From NCBI GenBank assembly GCA_950097015.1, contig CATNEN010000029.1, positions 744,001 to 808,000 on the forward strand: DNA of 64,000 nt. Reading direction: 5' to 3'. Shown piece after piece: positions 1-13,580 of this stretch. The notes beneath the pieces were generated by a model, which was not told where the DNA came from, did not search any database, and worked only from the letters and a program-made list of their open reading frames with translations. Each line of letters begins with the position of its first letter. Positions within the stretch are counted from its first letter, which is position 1. A program made the position numbers and the translations under genes. This DNA is from Macrostomum hystrix (taxonomy: Eukaryota > Animalia > Platyhelminthes).

Positions 1-205
1 CTGACACCCTGAATCTGACACCCTGAATCTGACACCCTGAATCTGACACCCTGAATCTGACACCCTGACTCTGACACCCTGAATCTGACACCCTGACTCT
101 AACATCCTGAATCTGACACCCTGAATCTGACACTCTGACTCTAACATCCTGAATCTGACACCCTGAATCTGACACCCTGACTCTGACACCCTGAATCTGA
201 CATCT
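1..205. repeat. 14-bp minisatellite (CTGAATCTGACACC)n, intronic
   Basis: Direct tandem copies visible. Confidence 0.9.
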
Positions 206-225
206 AGTACCAAACCACGAACTAG

Positions 226-3200
226 CAGGACAGAGACCACACAGACGGTTACGAGCAGGAGCTTGAGAAGATCTCAATGAAAGACGACGGCTACATCGGC
301 CTGGTGCTGAAGGTTCTGGCTCGAATCTGCGACGGTCAGCACAAGGGCCTGCAGAATTACCTTCGCGAACAGCCGGACAACATCAAGTCTTTCAATCTAG
401 TTGCCGAAGTCTCACAGTTTATCAATGTGGCTTATTCCAACATCAATAGCGATACCATTGAGCTGCTCATACAGCTGTTCTCCTCCGTCAATGAGTTCTG
501 CGCTGTGAGTTCATACATGGCTATGTAATATAAATATCACCTATTGAACATTGCAAACAAACAACTGGATTCTGTCATTCAATATTCCATTTAGGGCAAC
601 CAAGAAAACAGGGCGACAGTCTACGATAACAAAATCATCGACTACATCAATTTCATTTTGCGGACGTCTGATTTTGATAACTGCGAGCTGGAACAGATTC
701 TTAGCATGCGCCAGGCCATAGCCAACTTGCTGATGTCACTCATTGAGGAGAACTCGCCTGAGGCTGTCGTGATTGGTCGAGAGGTCAAGGACACTCTGGA
801 CAAAGAGGCTCTGTACAGGGTCATGACAGAGTGCTACGAGTATTACCAGAGAGACAATTCTGGCAAGGACGGCTGGCTGAGACGGCTCATGGTGAGCTGC
901 TGGCTGATATCTGTGGACTGTGCAGTCTGATATCTGTGGATTGTGCAGTCTGATATCTGTGGACTGTGCAGTCTGATATCTGTGGACTGTGCAGTCTGAT
1001 ATCTGTGGATTGTGCAGTCTGATATCTGTGGACTGTGCTGTCTGATATCTGTGGACTGTGCAGTCTGATATCTGTGGACTGTGCTGTCTGATATCTGTGG
1101 ACTGTGCTGTCTGATATCTGTGGACTGTGCAGTCTGATATCTGTGGACTGTGCTGTCTGATATCTGTGGACTGTGCAGTCTGATATCTGTGGACTGTGCA
1201 GTCTGATATCTGTGGACTGTGCAGTCTGATATCTGTGGACTGTGCAGTCTGATATCTGTGGACTGTATGCAGTCTGATATCTGTGGACTGTGCAGTCGGA
1301 TATCTGTGGACTGTGTTCACGCATTCCTCACGCACTTTGTAGAAGAATGACGACAACAAGGAACTGAGAGAGGCAATTTTTGATGTTGGCTTCTCATTTT
1401 ACACCATTCTGGCCCGGCTTTACGATATTGATCCCACAATGGGAAAGAAGGGTGAGCGAATTGATCTGATGACAAATTTAAGTAGTTTTTATTGGACCGT
1501 TGATTATCCATTCACTAATCACAAACTTATTTTTGTTGCTAGTACTAAGCACCATTATTAAGCGATAACAAGACAGCCGTTGGTTACTCGACCAATTTTG
1601 ATTTCCAGACACAGAACAATATGGACGAGGTAGGCAAGCCTCTTCCCTTCATCATCTGCTCTGCCTACTTCGTTGTTTTTTTTTAAAAAACTCAAACAGT
1701 TCAGAGACCTGTCAAACAGGTTAGGGGACTTGTCTAACAGGTTAGGGGACTTGTCTAACAGGTTAGGGGACTTGTCTAACAGGTTAGGGGACTTGTCTAA
1801 CAGGTTAGGGGACTTGTCTAACAGGTTAGGGGACTTGTCTAACAGGTTAGGGGACTTGTCTAACAGGTTAGGGGACTTGTCTAACAGGTTAGGGGACTTG
1901 TCTAACAGGTTAGGGGACTTGTCTAACAGGTTAGGGGACTTGTCTAACAGGTTAAGGGACTTGTCTAACAGGTTAGGGACTTGTCTAACAGGTTAGGGGA
2001 CTTGTCTAACAGGTTAGGGGACTTGTCTAACAGGTTAGGGGACTTGTCTAACAGGTTAGGGGACTTGTCTAACAGGTTAGGGGACTTGTCTAACAGGTTA
2101 GGGGACTTGTCTAACAGGTTAGGGGACTTATCTAACAGGTCGGTCTAACAGGTCGGTCTGACAGGTCTGTCTAAATCTAATTCTAGTTAGAATCTAGCAT
2201 TATTAATTAGTTAATCTACATCCTGTTGTGCGCTGGTTCTGAGCAACATCCAAAATACTGATCTAGCAATGTGACGTCCGTCTTATAGAGTGCTGCGCCA
2301 ATCTAGCTCGTAAAAGTCATGCGCTTTTTAAACACAGCTTAAAAAACAATAAAAATGAGCCCCAGTAACCATTTTGCAATGCAAGTCCTATTTTCAATCG
2401 CTGGTGGAGGTGGAGGTGGAGGCTTAAATCATTTGCGTTGAATTGCCTGCTTTGATTTTCCAGAAATTCATGAATACAAATTCATAATTATTCAATCTGA
2501 AGCTTATTTAATTGGCATGGCAAGGCAGAAAATTATGTCATAATAAAGCAATGTGTATGCGACTCAATGGGTTTGAAAATAAGAACCGATGCCATGCTTG
2601 CTTCTATGAGATTTTCCCTCTAAAAAATCTCAACTCCAGAGCTGAGAGTCACCGATCTGCAACTGAAGGCTTTCAAGTTTTTCAAGAAGAACTCAATGAC
2701 CATCGAAATGCTGAAGGATTCCAATCTGCAGAAGATTCACTTCCGGGTGCGGAATAAGGTCAGTGGAGTGGGGACCAATCAGAGGAGGGGTGCGGCCTGA
2801 TGCACTGACCAATCAGAGCTGGGGTATGGCCTGTTGCACTGACAATCAGAAGTCAGCAACTTTATTGGGCAAACAATTCGCTGAACTTAGCCCCCCGAAT
2901 TTACTGCAGAATGTGCTCAGAGAGGAGGTGAAAGAGAAGCTGAAGTGGAACGTGGATCGCAACTCGTCCAGCACGAAAATTCGCGACTTCATGGACTGGA
3001 CTAAAGCCATCCTGAACGACATTCACTACCAGAAGAAGGTGCTGTCCAACCCGCTGACCATTGTGCTCACCCGATTCTGGCTCATCTGGAACCATGCAGC
3101 CACTCTGGTGGCGGTCATTCTCAACCTCATCATGCTTATTGGACTCGAGGCTCCACCGGGCGGTGCCAACACGCCGACATTCGACATATCGAGTGACGCC

Positions 3201-6200
3201 TCCTTGATGCCTCCCCAAGCTTTCTTCAAGTGAGTGTCAACTTTTTCTGTCCTTCTTCCCGTGGGCCTGTCAGTGTCGGAGAGGTCAACACGTAGGCTTT
3301 TTTTCGCTAAAAGGTCATGGGTTCGAATCCGCTGCATGGACCTTGGGCTGGGATTCGAACTTACGACCACTCGATCAGAGCTCCGACGCTCTAACAACAG
3401 GGCTATAAGTAATAATAAAAATAATTGCAGGCAGTGGCACATCATTTGTTGACACTAGACTCGCAGTCAGCGAGGAGGCAATTCTGCCCATTTCTCTGAC
3501 TCCTGAGCACACACGTTCACAGGTGTGTACATCTGCCCTGACTTTCTCATCGTCAGGCAGTGTACACTCTCACTGTGCCTTGGAGGTTGGCCTTTAAGGG
3601 CGTGAATTGCAAGATAGGCCTCGTCTCACCGCGGAATCGAGCTCAGGGACCTTGGTGCGAGAGGCAGACGCGTCAGCCGCCCTGTAAGTTATCTAGAATA
3701 TTAACAATGAAAACTAACGGAACAATGCCCGCAGCACCACCGGTCAGTGGAAGGCCGACTATCCGACCCTGCCGACCTGGCTATACGCATTCGCTTACAT
3801 CCTTGATGCATTGTCCATTGTCATCCTGCTGGCCTTCTTCGTGGCCAATCATCCGCGCCCGCCGGATGTTGGCCGGCTGATTCGCCGGCTCCGTCGACTG
3901 CGCCGTAAGGAGCTCGACGAAGATGAGGACCTGCGCGAGGCCGGAGGCCAGGACAAGCTCTCCGTGAGGCTGCTGTCTATCGCCACCCTCTACTACCTGG
4001 TGTTCATAGGCTGCGCCTTCGCTGGCACCTTCTATAGTCCGTACTTCTTCGCCTTTCACCTACTGAACATTGTCAATAACAACCAGATGCTTCGAGGCGT
4101 CATTCAGGCCGTCACCACCAATGGTAAGTGAACAAATCAATGATGCGAAATTGAGGAATTGTCCGGATTAGATTGCAAATTTAAGGCAGCGGGGGCTAGG
4201 GAGCAGGGGTTACTGAGAGTAGAAAAGTAGGAGAAGAAAATAGAATATGCTAACTACTCTACTGATAGTAGAAAAGTAAGAGAAGAAAGGCTCCGCTTGT
4301 TAGAGTCGGGAATCGAACCCCCGACCTTCAAGTCGTGAGTCCCATGCTATAACCACTAGGCTACAACCTAGTTGGGCCAGATGTACAGCCAGTTGCGCGG
4401 AGCATCCATAGCTCAGTTATTATCAGCAGTATCAGTAGACCACGCTATTTTCCCCTGTGGGTATTTAAATAAACCGATGCCTACTTCACGACAGCTCCCA
4501 AACCGAATGAACGATTTTCGTGAAGTCCGTCCACAATTGTTCACAATTTTCCGCCCTTTACGATGAACTAACATTTAAAGCCTTCCGAGTAAAAAATGTG
4601 GTTATTTGAAATACCCCTTTCTACTATTAAGTGTATTGTTCAATTACTCAAATCGCATCCATGGGCAGTGATTCGAACCCCAGATCACATGGTCAGAAGT
4701 CAGAAACAATATCTACTTGACTACCAAGCTACCCATACTGCTAAACTACCTCGATAAGAAGCCGAGATTGTTCTTGTCCGCGTTCTCCAATTGCCTATTC
4801 AACACCGTCGCACCTCGCCTACACAGGACTGTCGCTGGTGTGGGTGTCAGTGCTTGGCATCGCAATCATGTACCTCTACGCGGTGGTCGCATTCGCCAAG
4901 TTTCGTATCGCCTTCCGGCCAGACGACAGCCTGATGTTCTGCGGCACTCTCTACCAGTGCTTCGTGACCATCCTGCGCTACGGGCTCATTGGCGACCTGT
5001 TCGAGGTGATGAAGGCTCGGTGCTTCGTCTCGATGAGTCCTATTTCCTACTTCAATAAAAACTAAGCCTCTCACTGAACACACCCGAAATACCTGCCCAA
5101 TTTTGTAGAATCTTGTACCGCCAACGACACACAGAACATTCGACGAATACATCTGGATGGCCCTGTTTAGCGTAACATTCTTTATTATAATCACCACCAT
5201 TGGACTGAATATCATTTTCGGTATCATTGTGGACACCTTCAGTCAGCTCAGGTGATGATCAAAGCAACTTCTTCGAAACTAGCATTTAATTAGCATATTT
5301 TTACCAACCAGTCGCAAACGACAACTCATCAACCTCACACCTACAGCAACCTCACTCCTCAACCAACCTCACTCCTCCACCAACCTCACTCCTCCACCAA
5401 CCTCACTCCTCCACCAACCTCATTCCTCCACCAACCTCACTCCTCCACCAACCTCACACCTACAGCAACCTCACTCCTCAACCAACCTCACTCCTCCACC
5501 AACCTCACTCCTCCACCAACCTTACACCTACAGCAACCTCACTCCTCAACCAACCTCACTCCTTCATCAACCTCACTCCTCAACCAACCTCACTCCTCCA
5601 CCAACCTCACTCCTCCTCCAACCTCACTCTTCCACAAAGCTCACTTCTCAAAAAACGTCATTCCTCCACAAAGCTCACTCCTCCACAAAGCTCACTCCTC
5701 CACAAAGCTCACTCCTCCACAAAGCTCACTCCTCCACAAAGCTCACTCCTCCACAAAGCTCACTCCTCCACAAAGCTCACTCCTCCACAAAGCTCACTCC
5801 TCCACAAAGCTCACTCCTCCACAAAGCTCACTCCTCCAAAAACCTCATTCCTCCTCAAAGCTCACTCCTCCACAAAGCTCACTCCTCCACAAAGCTCACT
5901 CCTCCACAAATCTCACTCCTCCAAAAACCTCATTCCTCCTCAAAGCTCACTCCTCCAAAAACCTCATTCCTCCACAAAGCTCACTACTCTAAATACCTCA
6001 CCCTTGAGTTACTCTCGCAGCCGCGCCCGTCCTTAGCCAAAAAAAGTTTTCCCGCCGCTGACAGAGACAAGAAGTGGCTTGCCGAGACAGACATGCGCAA
6101 CTGCTGCTTCATCTGCTCTCGCAACAATTACGATTTCGAGCACCACGGCCAGGGCTTCGAACACCACGTGCGCAGCGAGCACAACATGTGGGCCTACATC

Positions 6201-8286
6201 TTCTTCTTCATTCACCTGGAGGACACAGCGAAGAATGACTACACTTCCTTGGATTTGCACGTGTACAAGATGGTAAGCTTTCATTATTCTCATTCATTCT
6301 TTCATTCTTTCCTATAAAATGTATTCCCCTCGACTTCAGCTCAAGGAAGAGAGATTCGACTTTTTCCCGCTCAACCGGGCTCTCTGCCTGTCCGCAAGGG
6401 ACGACGACTCGACGGAATCGAAAATCGACGAACTACTCAACAATGTGAAGGATTTGGTGCAGCACCAGAAGGAAGAGGTCAGCGAGGGGATATAAACTTT
6501 TAGATGTGTCTTCCCCAATGATGTCCCCAAATAAGGGTCGTCACTGGAATCTCGCATAATACACCATCTGGCATACTATCAGTCTAAATCACAATCCCAT
6601 CAGGCTAAACCCCAATCCCATCAGGCTAAACCCCAATCCCATCAGTCTAAATCACAATCCCATCAGTCTAAACCCCAATCCCATCAGGCTAAACCCCAAT
6701 CCCATCAGGCTAAACCCCAATCCCATCAGTCTAAACCCCAATCCCATCAGGCTAAACCCCAATCCCATCAGTCTAAATCACAATCCCATCAGTCTAAACC
6801 CCAATCCCATCAGTCTAAACCCCAATCCCATCAGGCTAAACCCCAATCCCATCAGTCTAAATCACAATCCCATCAGTCTAAACCCCAATCCCATCAGTCT
6901 AAATCACAATCCCATCAGTCTAAACCCCAATCCCATCAGGCTAAACCCCAATCCCATCAGTCTAAACCCCAATCCCATCAGTCTAAATCACAATCCCATC
7001 AGTCTAAACCCCAATCCCATCAGTCTAAACCCCAATCCCATCAGGCTTAACCCCAATCCCATCAGTCTAAATCACAATCCCATCAGTCTAAACCCCAATC
7101 CCATCAGTCTAAACCCCAATCCCATCAGGCTAAACCCCAATCCCATCAGTCTAAATCACAATCCATCAGTCTAAACCCCAATCCCATCAGTCTAAATCAC
7201 AATCCCATCAGTCTAAACCCCAATCCCATCAGTCTAAACCCCAATCCCATCAGTCTAAACCCCAATCCCATCAGGCTAAACCCCAATCCCATCAGTCTAA
7301 ACCCCAATCCCATCAGTCTAAACCCCAATCCCATCAGTCTAAATCACAATCCCATCAGTCTAAACCCCAATCCCATCAGTCTAAATCACAATCCCATCAG
7401 GCTAAACCCCAATCCCATCAGGCTAAACCCCAATCCCATCAGTCTAAATCACAATCCCATCAGTCTAAACCCCAATCCCATCAGGCTAAACCCCTATCCC
7501 ATCAGTCTAAACCCCAATCCCATCAGTCTAAACCCCAATCCCATCAGTCTAAACCCCAATCCCATCAGTCTAAATCACAATCCCATCAGGCTAAACCCCA
7601 ATCCCATCAGGCTAAACCCCAATCCCATCAGTCTAAATCACAATCCCATCAGTCTAAACCCCAATCCCATCAGGCTAAACCCCAATCCCATCAGTCTAAA
7701 CCCCAATCCCATCAGTCTAAACCCCAATCCCATCAGTCTAAACCCCAATCCCATCAGTCTAAACCCCAATCCCATCAGTCTAAACCACAATTTCCTTCAA
7801 GGAAACGGAGCGCCGTCGTTGGGTGGAGCTGAACCGGCAAAAGAAGTGGCAGCAGAAGGTGCTAAGCAGCGGTCATCAGCAGCAGGAATCGGCGGCGGCG
7901 GCGGCGGCAGTTGTCGGCGGAGTGGGCCTTCGCGGCAGTCAACCGAACGCGGCCCGCAGCTATTTTCTGAACGTGCCGCGCCGGCCGCACGAGGAAGGCG
8001 ACGATGACGACGAAGACGACGAGCTCCGGCGATCATCGTCACTTCCGGGCAGCGAGGATGACTACCGGCTGTCTGTGCCAAACGTGAGTGCAAAGTCATC
8101 TGCGGCCTCTCATATTCCTATTTGGTGTAGAAATATTTCCTCATTATCCAGACCCGACAAAACAAACCGCAGGTCAACCAGCCACACCGGCCTGCAGCGG
8201 GCCCGGTTGAGGATGCCGCCGCCACAGATGAGCACATGGGATTTCTAGACGACTACGATGAAAATGGGGAGCCGAGACCGCAGTAA
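226..8286 (+). CDS. ITPR: Divergent inositol-1,4,5-trisphosphate receptor-like (IP3R/RyR superfamily) Ca2+ release channel, 3' portion; 5' exons lie outside the window
   Basis: Phase-consistent GT-AG exons 226/229-504, 595-891, 1343-1451, (optional 1609-1629), 2640-2758, 2910-3229, 3735-4123, 4827-5005, 5109-5251, 6065-6272, 6340-6477, 7802-8083, 8173-8286 (TAA). Translation gives RIH-associated-like LARICDGQHKGLQNYLREQ...EFCAGNQEN, TIEMLKDSNLQKIHFRV, the S4-S5 linker LRGVIQAVTTNG, S6 GLNIIFGIIVDTFSQLR, and the C-terminal C2H2 zinc site CFIC...HVRSEHNMWAY. AATAAA at 8794-8799. Confidence 0.93.
903..1318. repeat. 23-bp minisatellite (GATATCTGTGGACTGTGCAGTCT)n in an IP3R intron
   Basis: About 18 tandem copies starting just after the donor at 892. 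Confidence 0.95.
1712..2165. repeat. 21-bp minisatellite (AACAGGTTAGGGGACTTGTCT)n
   Basis: About 20 near-perfect tandem copies. Confidence 0.95.
3410..3685 (-). mobile_element. tRNA-headed SINE family A
   Basis: Shares body (CTGACTCCTGAGCACACAC...GTGTACACTCTCACTG) and head (CTCGCACCAAGG...TTCGATTCCGCGG) with copies at 23900, 33908, 35903 and 63586; short AAT-type tail. Confidence 0.75.
4300..4368 (-). mobile_element. tRNA-derived SINE head (family B)
   Basis: Reverse complement reads GGTTGTAGCCTAGTGG...GGTTCGATTCCCGACTC, nearly matching 44119-44180. Confidence 0.65.
4433..4626. mobile_element. MITE-like dispersed element
   Basis: Inverted subterminal GGGTATTTAAATAAACC / GGTTATTTGAAATACCC; core CACGACAGCTCCCAAACCGAATGA shared (one mismatch) with copies at 9760-9875 and 45939-46177. 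Confidence 0.65.
5330..5990. repeat. ~17-bp minisatellite (CTCACTCCTCCACAAAG / CTCACTCCTCCACCAAC)n
   Basis: Tandem copies in two sub-variants. Confidence 0.9.
6586..7788. repeat. 21-bp minisatellite (AAACCCCAATCCCATCAGTCT)n
   Basis: About 57 tandem copies filling an IP3R intron. Confidence 0.95.
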
Positions 8287-11581: not shown

Positions 11582-12822
11582 CATAGCCTGCACCCACCTC
11601 CTCACTTTCTGCCTGCTGCCTTGCACCCGCCTCCTCACTTTTTGCCTGCTGCCCTGCACCCGCCTCCTCACTTTCTGCCTTGCCCTGCACCCGACTCCTC
11701 ACTTTCTGCCTTGCCCTGCACCCACCTCCTCACTTTCTGCCTTGCCTTGCACCCGCCTCCTCACTTTCTGCCTTGCCCTGCACCCACCTCCTCACTTTCT
11801 GCCTGCTGCCTTGCACCCGCCTCCTCACTTTTTGCCTGCTGCCTTGCACCCGCCTCCTCACTTTCTGCCTTGCCCTGCACCCGCCTCCTCACTTTCTGCC
11901 TTGCCCTGCACCCACCTCCTCACTTTCTGCCTTGCCTTGCACCCGCCTCCTCACTTTCTGCCTTGCCCTGCACCCACCACCTCACTTTCTGCCTTGCCCT
12001 GCACCCGCCTCCTCACTTTCTGCCTTGCCCTGCACCCACCTCCTCACTTTCTGCCTTGCCTTGCACCCGCCTCCTCACTTTCTGCCTTGCCCTGCACCCA
12101 CCTCCTCACTTTCTGCCTGCTGCCTTGCACCCGCCTCCTCACTTTTTGCCTGCTGCCTTGCACCCGCCTCCTCACTTTCTGCCTTGCCCTGCACCCGCCT
12201 CCTCACTTTCTGCCTTGCCCTGCACCCACCTCCTCACTTTCTGCCTTGCCTTGCACCCGCCTCCTCACTTTCTGCCTTGCCCTGCACCCACCTCCTCACT
12301 TTCTGCCTTGCCCTGCACCCGCCTCCTCACTTTCTGCCTTGCCCTGCACCCACCTCCTCACTTTCTGCCTTGCCTTGCACCCGCCTCCTCACTTTCTGCC
12401 TTGCCCTGCACCCACCTCCTCACTTTCTGCCTTGCCCTGCACCCACCTCCTCACTTTCTGCCTGCTGCCTTGCACCCGCCTCCTCACTTTTTGCCTGCTG
12501 CCTTGCACCCGCCTTCTCACCTTCTGCCTGCTGCCTTGCACCCGCCTCCTCACTTTTTGCCTGCTGCCTTGCACCCACCTCCTCACTTTCTGCCTTGCCT
12601 TGCACCCGCCTCCTCACTTTCTGCCTTGCCCTGCACCCACCTCCTCACTTTCTGCCTTGCCCTGCACCCACCACCTCACTTTCTGCCTGCTGCCCTGCAA
12701 CCACCTCCTCACTTTCTGCCTGCTGCCCTGCAACCACCTCACTTTCTGCCTGCTGCCCTGCAACCACCTCACTTTCTGCCTGCTGCCCTGCAACCACCTC
12801 CTCACATTCTGCCTTGACCTGC
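11582..12822. repeat. 31/35-bp C/T-rich minisatellite (CCTGCACCCRCCTCCTCACTTTCTGCCTTGC)n
   Basis: About 38 tandem copies; explains the three overlapping Pro/Leu/Cys ORFs. Confidence 0.95.
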
Positions 12823-13580
12823 ACTAAGACATAATGAAAAATATTTTTTTTAATTGGCAGAAACATATATTTACAGTATGGGTAAAACAATTTGGGGTAT
12901 TAATGAGTGACAGCTGAAGATACGTCAGATTAGAAAATTAACAAAAGAGGTTTCCAGCTGTCCATGCGAAACAACCCCGTATGAAAACAATTGAATCGAA
13001 CTGAAGCAAGTGACAAATTATAATGTTGCTAATTGTTGAGATTGGGCAAAAGGCAGCGGTGGTACTGAAGGAGGCGAAGCAACAGTCAATGGCAGGTTCA
13101 CGAGAAAAGTAAACATGGTTTAAAACTTGTGTACAAATCCAACAAAATATTTAAAGATTATTAATTCAAAAGCACAAAAAAGCTTTTAAAGACTGCAGAA
13201 CGTCTAAACACTGATACTTTGAGAAAACACTAAACCATCTATCTATTAGGTTCTTTTTTAATTACTCCAAAATTAGAAAATTAGGGTCAAAGTAATGCAA
13301 AAAGCACAGTTTTTTAATTAGAAGCGAAGGGCCCTACTGACTGGCCGCTTAACCAGACGATCTGAGCATCTGAGGGACTGACTGCTCAATCTGAGCATCT
13401 AAGAAACTGCCTGCTTAATCTGAGGATCTGAGGGACTGACTGCTCAACCGTAGGATATTGAAGGATGGCTTGCCATTTCGTTATCATTGGTTTAAAGTAC
13501 AGACAAAGTACATTATCAGGAAAGAAATCACAGTAACTATCGAGTAGTGTGCACCGATTCAACCAGCTTCAACAAGCAGC

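What the first reader, a model, noticed from the sequence alone, without database searches (positions are those of the whole stretch)
4940..4996. IP3R-like channel with a remodelled selectivity filter (LRYG-LIGD instead of GLRSGGGVGD)
Seen: contiguous, intron-free coding sequence reads CGTLYQCFVTILRYGLIGDLFE. Established: IP3Rs have C..L..C..TV..HGLRSGGGVGD and RyRs GVRAGGGIGD; this filter is among the most conserved motifs of the superfamily, and its Asp governs Ca2+ selectivity. Here the segment is about five residues shorter (RSGGG missing), although the Asp is kept. The conserved Asp at the start of S6 (IP3R YDLLFF) is also replaced (FSVTFF), and the luminal loop is very short. The gate (GIIVDTF) and the Zn site are intact, so this is not a decayed gene. 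Inference: a divergent paralogue of the IP3R/RyR superfamily with different conductance or selectivity.
Basis: partly seen in the sequence, partly recalled or inferred. Interest (0 to 1): 0.8.

Follow-up and report, generated by a model that had tools for sequence, protein, structure and literature searches.

The report
Flatworm IP3R-B channel, glycine-free pore filter
The odd pore motif is real and is in the mRNA, but it is the standard signature of an old, almost unstudied invertebrate branch of the IP3-receptor/ryanodine-receptor family, not a one-off remodelling in this genome.

Summary
The motif is there. Window 4940-5005 (+) encodes CGTLYQCFVTILRYGLIGDLFE. Spliced GT..AG contigs from three runs in two studies carry this exon without a single difference, so it is neither an assembly deletion nor a pseudogene.

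The window holds the channel-forming 3' part of a Macrostomum-like flatworm gene. Matches include RIH_assoc, the transmembrane helices from about S1 to S6, the GIIVDTF gate and a Cys2His2 zinc finger.

The filter is not unique. R[YF]GLIGD[LM]F[ED] occurs in 71 proteins I retrieved from molluscs, annelids, nemerteans, a brachiopod and Macrostomum lignano. All are auto-annotated as "ITPR-like".

In trees the window protein sits in a spiralian clade (100/100). That clade lies inside a Placozoa+Bilateria group with short filters. Sponges and choanoflagellates (GGGLGE) and Capsaspora CAOG_04510 are next out, and canonical IP3Rs are separate. This fits the IP3R-B family of Alzayady et al. 2015.

Profile alignment gives a 2-residue deletion, not 5. 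The Glu of LFE is then the homologue of the canonical filter Asp, and the "kept" Asp sits where the glycines were.

Function is untested. I infer a Ca2+-regulated ER cation channel with altered permeation. First readers also noted non-canonical ITPR genes on other pieces of this genome.

The parts
226..506 (+). Exon with the RIH_assoc domain; carries the first Ca2+-sensor carboxylate (ICDGQH, Asp in place of hIP3R3 E1882) and the second (NEFC, equivalent to E1946). Boundaries approximate.
   Evidence: Pfam PF08454 E=2.6e-16; alignment to 6dqj; tblastn with M. lignano orthologues.
595..891 (+). Exon of the ARM3-like region. Boundaries approximate.
   Evidence: ORF frames; tblastn 69-71% identity to M. 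lignano Mlig033347.
1349..1462 (+). Small exon. Boundaries approximate.
   Evidence: tblastn 71% identity.
2627..2758 (+). Small exon (FKFFKKNSMTIEML...). Boundaries approximate.
   Evidence: tblastn 75% identity.
2907..3229 (+). Exon with the first transmembrane helix. Its 3' end is verified; its 5' end is approximate.
   Evidence: tblastn 77% identity. The loose end of the spliced contig in X4 before 3735 equals window 3200-3229.
3735..4123 (+). Exon with transmembrane helices up to the S4-S5 linker (FFAFHLLNIVNNNQMLRGVIQAVTTNG).
   Evidence: Spliced contigs, joint 4123|4827 GT..AG in X2, X4 and X5; 81% identity to M. lignano P0001.
4827..5005 (+). Exon with S5, a short luminal loop, the pore helix and the filter.
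   Evidence: Spliced contigs with 0 differences; translation.
4976..5005 (+). Filter motif RYGLIGDLFE. Asp is at 4994-4996. Glu at 5003-5005 is the last codon of the exon.
   Evidence: motif statistics; homology alignment.
5109..5251 (+). Exon with S6. FSVTFF (5166-5183) replaces the canonical YDLLFF. Gate GIIVDTF at 5220-5240.
   Evidence: Joints 5005|5109 (X2, X4, X5) and 5251|6065 (X4, X5); PDB hits to IP3R S6 at E=0.0012; Pfam Ion_trans.
6065..6272 (+). Exon with the linker Cys2His2 zinc finger (6105-6182) and the EHNMW motif.
   Evidence: joints; phmmer against PDB gives IP3R3 2.3e-09 and RyR about 3e-07, with C, C, H, H aligned.
6340..6477 (+). C-terminal domain exon.
   Evidence: Joint 6272|6340. 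The loose end behind 6478 equals window 7803 onward.
7802..8083 (+). C-terminal tail exon. Start verified; end inferred from a GTGAGT donor and from homology.
8173..8286 (+). Inferred last coding exon (acidic ...HMGFLDDYDENGEP... then stop).
   Evidence: tblastn 69% identity to the tail of M. lignano P0236, in another frame, with an AG acceptor. Not checked with reads.

Best explanation
Window 226-8286 (+) is the 3' part of an expressed gene of a Macrostomum-like flatworm. It encodes a giant intracellular channel of the IP3R-B branch of the IP3R/RyR superfamily, specifically a spiralian subfamily I call subtype 1. RYGLIGDLFE is that subfamily's conserved filter.

Shown here: the motif is in DNA and in spliced transcripts. 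The protein groups with M. lignano Mlig033347 inside a clade of mollusc, annelid, nemertean and brachiopod proteins that share the motif. Every Placozoa+Bilateria member examined has lost the triple glycine and is two residues shorter than its sponge and choanoflagellate relatives. The S6 gate, the zinc finger and both Ca2+-sensor carboxylates are kept.

Inferred: the protein forms a tetrameric ER cation channel that is gated or modulated by cytosolic Ca2+, probably not by IP3. Its narrow part would be built from the C-terminal end of an extended pore helix, with a ring of Asp (GD) and a ring of Glu (LFE), in place of the glycine-rich loop. Conductance and Ca2+ selectivity should then differ from IP3Rs and RyRs.
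For: Identity and expression: Pfam RIH_assoc and Ion_trans; PDB matches only to IP3R and RyR; GT..AG spliced contigs in three runs from two studies with an intact frame.

Family: 1205 relatives in the representative search. More than 100 proteins of about 1500-3070 aa come from Spiralia, hemichordates, an acoel, Trichoplax and sponges, most with Ins145_P3_rec+MIR+RYDR_ITPR+RIH_assoc+Ion_trans.

Trees: subtype 1 has 100/100 support, subtype 1 plus subtype 2 has 99/94, the short-filter clade 100/98, the holozoan clade with Capsaspora CAOG_04510 100/100, and canonical IP3Rs form a separate clade.

Motif: in 71 sequences the final acid is present 71/71, the Asp 66/71, and the S6-start residue is His 60/71 and never Asp.

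Homology of the filter: with Trichoplax VGFLSGFHEAL bridging sponge FGLLSGGGLGEAL.

Ca2+ sensor: Asp and Glu kept.

IP3 pocket in relatives: R265, K508, R511, R568 and K569 are kept, but T266, T267, R269 and Y567 are lost.

Model: an AF2 model of the orthologue has the pore helix running through RFGLI, a break at GD and a one-turn helix LFDN, with pLDDT 88 and 73 for the ten-residue blocks 181-190 and 191-200 that hold the motif. Only RyR and IP3R folds are hit.

Against: No functional data exist for any bilaterian member. In canonical IP3Rs a single Gly substitution in GGGXG gives a dead pore (PMC7939385), so a glycine-free filter might not conduct at all. From my memory of the Alzayady 2015 abstract, the Capsaspora IP3R-B gave no Ca2+ release. 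The N-terminal ligand-binding part of this gene lies outside the window. That CAOG_04510 is the published CO.IP3R-B is an inference. The paper was not available, and the only basis is that CO.IP3R-A has another accession. RyRs could not be put in the tree because of the search's length cap. The structural reading rests on a monomer model.
Confidence: 0.78

Rival explanations
1. The protein is a non-conducting or 'dead-pore' family member. It would act as a scaffold, a Ca2+/ligand sensor or a regulatory subunit and would not itself pass ions.
For: Single Gly changes in GGGXG abolish Ca2+ release in IP3R1 and IP3R2 (PMC7939385). IP3R-B is cited as unable to bind IP3. From my memory of the Alzayady 2015 abstract, CO.IP3R-B released no Ca2+.
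Against: The pore-lining parts are the most conserved parts of the family. GLNIIFGIIVDTFSEL is almost invariant. The filter motif is fixed across phyla, with the final acidic residue present in 71/71 sequences. The zinc finger and Ca2+-sensor residues are kept. Such constraint on a pore that passes nothing would be odd.
Confidence: 0.2
2. The filter is a lineage-specific remodelling of this one flatworm gene. This is the novelty the first reader implied.
For: The motif differs from every solved IP3R and RyR. Exon F alone reaches only E=1.5 against the PDB.
Against: The identical or near-identical motif occurs in 71 proteins from at least five phyla, and the trees nest the gene within them.
Confidence: 0.02
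3. An assembly or sequencing deletion removed the glycines, or the locus is a pseudogene.
For: None found.
Against: The unspliced contigs of X1 and the spliced contigs of three other runs are identical over the exon. M. lignano fragments P0001 and P0002 carry LRFGLIGDLF. The frame is open through all verified exons.
Confidence: 0.01
4. It is the flatworm's ordinary IP3R (IP3R-A orthologue), simply fast-evolving in the pore.
For: Databases name the relatives 'IP3 receptor type 1/2/3-like', and they share the IP3R domain order.
Against: Canonical metazoan IP3Rs form a separate, fully supported clade. That clade includes a Ptychodera IP3R that coexists with two Ptychodera members of the short-filter clade. 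S. mansoni IP3R and RyR homologues keep GGGXGD (PMC3194816). IP3-pocket residues R269, T266, T267 and Y567 are lost family-wide.
Confidence: 0.03

Closest known systems
IP3R-B family (Alzayady et al. 2015, Mol Biol Evol 32:2236; Capsaspora CO.IP3R-B)
   Same: The window protein shares a fully supported holozoan clade with Capsaspora CAOG_04510, choanoflagellate and sponge proteins. Relatives have IP3R-like domain order and size. No vertebrate appears among the 120 best relatives. Key IP3-pocket residues are lost, which agrees with the cited lack of IP3 binding.
   Different: Membership rests on my inference that CAOG_04510 is CO.IP3R-B. The bilaterian members have a filter of their own. It is glycine-free and two residues shorter, and in subtype 1 it is fixed as RYGLIGD[LM]F[ED]. 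I could not find this described: a text search for the motif returned nothing and the 2015 paper was not readable here.
Canonical IP3 receptors (IP3R-A; ITPR1-3, solved structures 6dqj, 3jav, 8ear)
   Same: RIH_assoc, S6 with the hydrophobic gate, the Cys2His2 zinc finger, EHNMW, and both Ca2+-sensor carboxylates (E1882 becomes Asp, E1946 kept). Relatives carry the N-terminal Ins145_P3_rec and MIR domains.
   Different: There is no GGG[VI]GD. The S5-to-pore-helix loop is very short. The Asp at the start of S6 is replaced. The gate Ile equivalent to I2590 is Val. The protein falls in a separate clade.
Ryanodine receptors
   Same: Short luminal loop and an S5 sequence (YLYAVVAF versus YLYTVVAF). 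Exon F's only PDB hit is a RyR. The model's best Foldseek hits include RyR1 and RyR2 at about 30% identity.
   Different: Relatives are about 1500-3070 aa, and their precomputed Pfam lists show no SPRY or RyR-repeat domain. There is no GGGIGDE. RyRs were not included in my trees.
Tetrameric cation channels with a short acidic filter at the end of the pore helix (for example TRPV-type ...GMGD; from memory, a resemblance only)
   Same: A pore helix followed directly by G-D, as in the AF2 model.
   Different: No homology is claimed. This was not tested here.

Membership tests
IP3R/RyR superfamily | RIH_assoc domain upstream of the channel domain | tested here: met
   PF08454 E=2.6e-16, 59.8 bits against a cut-off of 28.5.
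IP3R/RyR superfamily | S6 with the conserved gate motif, followed by a Cys2His2 zinc finger and EHNMW | tested here: met
   GIIVDTF aligned to IP3R2/3 S6. C, C, H, H aligned to hIP3R3 2538/2541/2558/2563.
IP3R/RyR superfamily | GGGxGD selectivity filter | tested here: not met
   The window has RYGLIGDLFE. The feature is also absent from every Placozoa+Bilateria member of its clade that was examined.
IP3R/RyR superfamily | N-terminal MIR / RYDR_ITPR / ligand-binding domains | not testable with these tools
   The 5' part of the gene lies upstream of the window. Most full-length relatives carry PF08709, PF02815 and PF01365.
Canonical IP3R (IP3R-A) | Groups with metazoan IP3Rs in a tree | tested here: not met
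   Canonical IP3Rs form a separate 100/100 clade.
Canonical IP3R (IP3R-A) | Complete IP3-binding residue set (R265, T266, T267, R269, R504, K508, R511, Y567, R568, K569) | tested here: inconclusive
   The region is not in the window. In relatives, R265, K508, R511, R568 and K569 are kept, R504 becomes K, and T266, T267, R269 and Y567 are lost. The M. lignano orthologue is covered only in the alpha-domain, where it shows the same pattern.
Ryanodine receptor | About 5000 aa with SPRY and RyR repeat domains | tested here: not met
   Relatives are about 1500-3070 aa without those Pfam domains. The window itself cannot show this.
IP3R-B (Alzayady 2015) | Clade with Capsaspora CO.IP3R-B, apart from IP3R-A | tested here: met
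   100/100 clade with CAOG_04510. That this is CO.IP3R-B is inferred, because CO.IP3R-A is XP_004347577.1 and CAOG_04510 is the other MIR-bearing, IP3R-sized Capsaspora protein.
IP3R-B (Alzayady 2015) | Absent from vertebrates | tested here: inconclusive
   There is no vertebrate, arthropod or nematode among the 120 best hits to a subtype-1 query. Only 120 of 209 hits were listed.
IP3R-B (Alzayady 2015) | No IP3 binding | not testable with these tools
   Needs a binding assay.

The most novel reading that the evidence does not exclude
Bilaterian IP3R-B channels, with the RYGLIGD[LM]F[ED] subtype as the best-conserved example, are a third functional class of giant ER channels. They would not be gated by IP3. 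Their glycine-free filter with two acidic rings would give permeation unlike both IP3Rs and RyRs, for example low conductance or weak Ca2+ over monovalent selectivity. Several paralogues per genome occur in flatworms, molluscs, annelids and nemerteans.
Probability: 0.4. Interest if true: 0.7.

Novelty: new member of a known kind. Interest (0 to 1): 0.4.

Why it matters
Textbooks, and a recent paper read here, say invertebrates have one IP3R and one RyR. This gene belongs to a third branch that is large and strongly conserved. Flatworms, molluscs, annelids and nemerteans carry several copies each, and databases label them as ordinary ITPRs. Its pore lacks the glycine triplet that cannot tolerate even one substitution in human IP3Rs. 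The family therefore offers a natural experiment on how the filter of these giant channels works. It may also point to an unrecognised Ca2+-store conductance in model flatworms used for regeneration research. For this scan the result is mostly a correction: the feature is real and conserved, but not peculiar to this genome.

Tried and rejected
- The PDB sequence search with the filter exon alone gave only one RyR hit at E=1.5, too weak to use.
- Pfam found nothing on most single exons.
- Alzayady et al. 2015 could not be read by DOI or by PMC id. The 'IP3R-B' searches mostly hit 'IP3R-binding'.
- A text search for RYGLIGD, YGLIGD, CAOG_04510 and XP_004347257 returned nothing.
- A scallop 'RyR-like' paper turned out to describe a true 5191-aa RyR and is irrelevant here.
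The trees therefore lack RyRs.
- The very high-copy intron repeat at about 4264-4639 is not a recognisable tRNA.
- Notes of this scan gave nothing for 'ryanodine' or 'RyR'.
- One MAFFT run timed out and was replaced by motif look-ups.
- The assembly-deletion, pseudogene and lineage-specific readings were considered and rejected (see rival explanations).
It was recovered for only one sequence, Tubulanus P0175.

Full report
**Observation.** Window 4940-5005 on the + strand reads CGTLYQCFVTILRYGLIGDLFE in one open exon. The coordinates in the finding, 4940-4996, end at the GD. Downstream, FSVTFF lies at 5166-5183, GIIVDTF at 5220-5240, and a CFIC...H...H zinc-finger motif at 6105-6182. The loop between S5 and the pore helix is only about a dozen residues.

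**Gene model and expression.** Pfam finds RIH_assoc in the exon at 226-506 (E=2.6e-16) and Ion_trans on the S6 exon. PDB sequence searches with single exons hit only IP3Rs and RyRs.

Eight public runs hold the stretch. I laid contigs of four of them on window 3700-6500.
- X1 (on record as 'DNA?') covers exons and introns.
- X2, X4 and X5, from two studies, hold contigs that skip 4124-4826, 5006-5108 and 6273-6339; X4 and X5 also skip 5252-6064. All skipped stretches have GT..AG ends, and the contigs show 0 differences in the exon with the motif.
- The runs are not on record as RNA, but the spliced form shows that they contain cDNA.
- The joined exons give one open frame.
- Exon ends upstream of 2907 and the last intron (8084-8172) are inferred from tblastn with M. 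lignano proteins and from splice signals only.

Assembly deletion and pseudogene are therefore excluded.

**Organism.** The best named relatives are Macrostomum lignano proteins. Fragment P0001 is 81% identical over the S4-S5 exon and carries LRFGLIGDLF. Mlig033347 is 67-73% identical over the C-terminal region. The window therefore comes from a Macrostomum-like flatworm.

**Relatives.** A search of 1.84 billion representatives with P0001 gave 1205 hits. Cluster look-ups and a word search with the channel domain of a nemertean member returned more than 100 proteins of about 1500-3070 aa.
- They come from molluscs, annelids, nemerteans, a brachiopod, M. lignano (at least four loci), hemichordates, amphioxus, an acoel, Trichoplax, sponges, choanoflagellates and Capsaspora.
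- Most carry Ins145_P3_rec, MIR, RYDR_ITPR, RIH_assoc and Ion_trans.
- Most are named 'IP3 receptor type N-like' by automatic annotation.

**Filter motifs.**
- Subtype 1 has V[IV]RYGLIGD[LM]F[ED]. It occurs in molluscs, annelids, nemerteans, Lingula and Macrostomum, and the window belongs here.
- Subtype 2 has IHHG[FL]V[DE].PYTTFE in molluscs and IHRGLIAGIYDY in M. lignano.
- Hemichordates have VRFGLIDGLQE.
- Capsaspora CAOG_04510 has LNFGLENGLAS.
- Sponges and choanoflagellates keep L[KR].GLLSGGGLGEAL.

Among the 71 sequences in hand with the subtype-1 pattern, the last acidic position is Glu or Asp in 71/71. The GD Asp is present in 66/71. The residue at the start of S6 is His in 60/71 and never Asp; the window has Ser.

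**Trees.** I built a quick tree of 57 rows and a careful tree of 43 rows (ultrafast bootstrap / SH-aLRT).
- The window protein groups with Mlig033347 (100/100).
- Both lie inside subtype 1 (100/100).
- Subtype 1 is sister to spiralian subtype 2 (99/94).
- These lie inside a Placozoa+Bilateria clade in which all filters are short (100/98).
- Sponges come next, then choanoflagellates and Capsaspora CAOG_04510, all in a 100/100 holozoan clade.
- Canonical metazoan IP3Rs are a separate 100/100 clade. They include a Ptychodera IP3R that coexists with two Ptychodera members of the short-filter clade.
- Chytrid and mucoromycete proteins with GGGxGD lie between the two.
- RyRs are missing from these trees because the search tool's length cap kept them out.

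This topology matches what I recall of Alzayady et al. 2015: IP3R-A against IP3R-B/RyR, with IP3R-B lost in vertebrates. [quoted passage not shown] CO.IP3R-A is XP_004347577.1, so the other IP3R-sized Capsaspora protein, CAOG_04510, is probably CO.IP3R-B. That step is an inference, because the 2015 paper was not available.

**How the filter changed.** MAFFT on 56 pore segments and hmmalign to a profile built only from long-filter sequences both give GLRNGGGVGD against GLI--GDLFE. Trichoplax (VGFLSGFHEAL) bridges sponge FGLLSGGGLGEAL and the bilaterian forms. Three points follow.
- The deletion is two residues.
- The Glu that ends exon F (5003-5005) is the homologue of the canonical filter Asp.
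- The Asp stands where a glycine stood.

The five-residue alternative was recovered for one sequence only. Either way, the glycine triplet is gone from every Placozoa+Bilateria member examined. Because sponges and choanoflagellates keep it, the loss is derived and dates to before the split of placozoans and bilaterians.

**What is kept.**
- The two Ca2+-sensor carboxylates of hIP3R3 are present. E1882 is Asp in every metazoan member in which the motif was located, and E1946 is Glu in the window and in the four subtype-1 relatives in which it was located.
- The zinc-finger ligands align exactly.
- The gate Phe is kept, and the gate Ile is Val family-wide.
- In the N-terminal domain of relatives, R265, K508, R511, R568 and K569 are kept. 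R504 is Lys. T266, T267, R269 and Y567 are lost, in Capsaspora as well; the M. lignano orthologue is covered only in the alpha-domain, where the pattern is the same. That region lies outside the window.

**Model.** An AF2 model was built of the orthologue's S3-to-C-terminal-domain segment with 46 aligned relatives (mean pLDDT 80.6). The pore helix runs through RFGLI, breaks at GD, forms a one-turn helix LFDN, and then continues to S6. Foldseek finds only RyR and IP3R chains (E about 1e-10, 24-31% identity). This is a monomer model, so which residues face the pore remains an inference.

**Mechanism.** My preferred reading is a tetrameric ER cation channel with Ca2+-dependent gating, no classical IP3 gating, and a short filter made of two rings of carboxylates. 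I put this at about 0.5-0.55. The main rival is a non-conducting protein, at about 0.2. It is supported by the dead-pore effect of single Gly substitutions in IP3R1 and IP3R2 (PMC7939385). It is weakened by the extreme conservation of the pore lining.

**Novelty.** That subfamily has no characterised properties. I found no text mentioning the motif. First-reader notes on other pieces of this genome also mention non-canonical ITPR genes; I did not check them.

Noticed in passing
window 1-202, 904-1315, 1706-2140, 5330-5989, 6578-7791: Five introns of this gene each hold their own long minisatellite, with periods of 14, 23, 21, 17 and 21 nt and 14-58 copies at 88-98% matches. The arrays read as long open frames in ORF lists. 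A further array (period 31/314) lies at 11587-12824, downstream of the gene.
   Followed up: partly
window 4264-4639 (intron between exons E and F): Two short segments (about 4303-4369 and 4478-4524) are extremely high-copy. Summed contig depth in run X1 is up to about 450,000, against about 70-110 for the flanks, with hundreds of loose ends. This looks like a very abundant short interspersed repeat. ARAGORN finds no tRNA there.
   Followed up: partly
window 5006-5017: Read through the donor, the intron begins V-M-K-A. Several mollusc subtype-1 proteins have exonic ...GDLFEVMKAH... at the same place. The window's real next exon (NLVPPTTHRTF) has the same length as the mollusc segment, so this is probably coincidence, and the read-through hits a stop after 20 codons.
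   Followed up: partly
relatives P0199, P0176, P0265, P0230, P0257, P0281, P0066, P0170 (N-terminal ~600 aa): Across the sampled IP3R-B-like clade, from Capsaspora to molluscs, a basic pocket is conserved (R265, K504, K508, R511, R568 and K569 equivalents). Four IP3 contacts are lost (T266, T267, R269, Y567). This may mean a ligand other than IP3.
   Followed up: partly
P0174, P0175, P0201, P0222 (nemertean and chiton relatives): Some database proteins carry 15-30 extra residues directly after GD[LM]FE, at the position of the conserved intron. These could be retained introns in gene models or real alternative or micro-exons. A first-reader note on another piece of this genome (s1-278239) mentions acidic microexons after the filter.
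   Followed up: no
window 8084-8286: The C-terminal end of the protein (acidic ...GFLDDYDENGEP) is conserved with M. lignano. It lies in a separate last exon in another frame. Reading straight on from 7802 to the stop at 8248 gives a wrong tail.
   Followed up: partly
P0003-P0011 (metagenome and Logan fragments): Environmental contigs encode the nearly invariant S4-S5 segment GYFFAFHLLNIVNNNQLLRGVIQAVTQNG. They break off at the same intron position as the window gene (after ...NG), so the intron position is shared widely.
   Followed up: no
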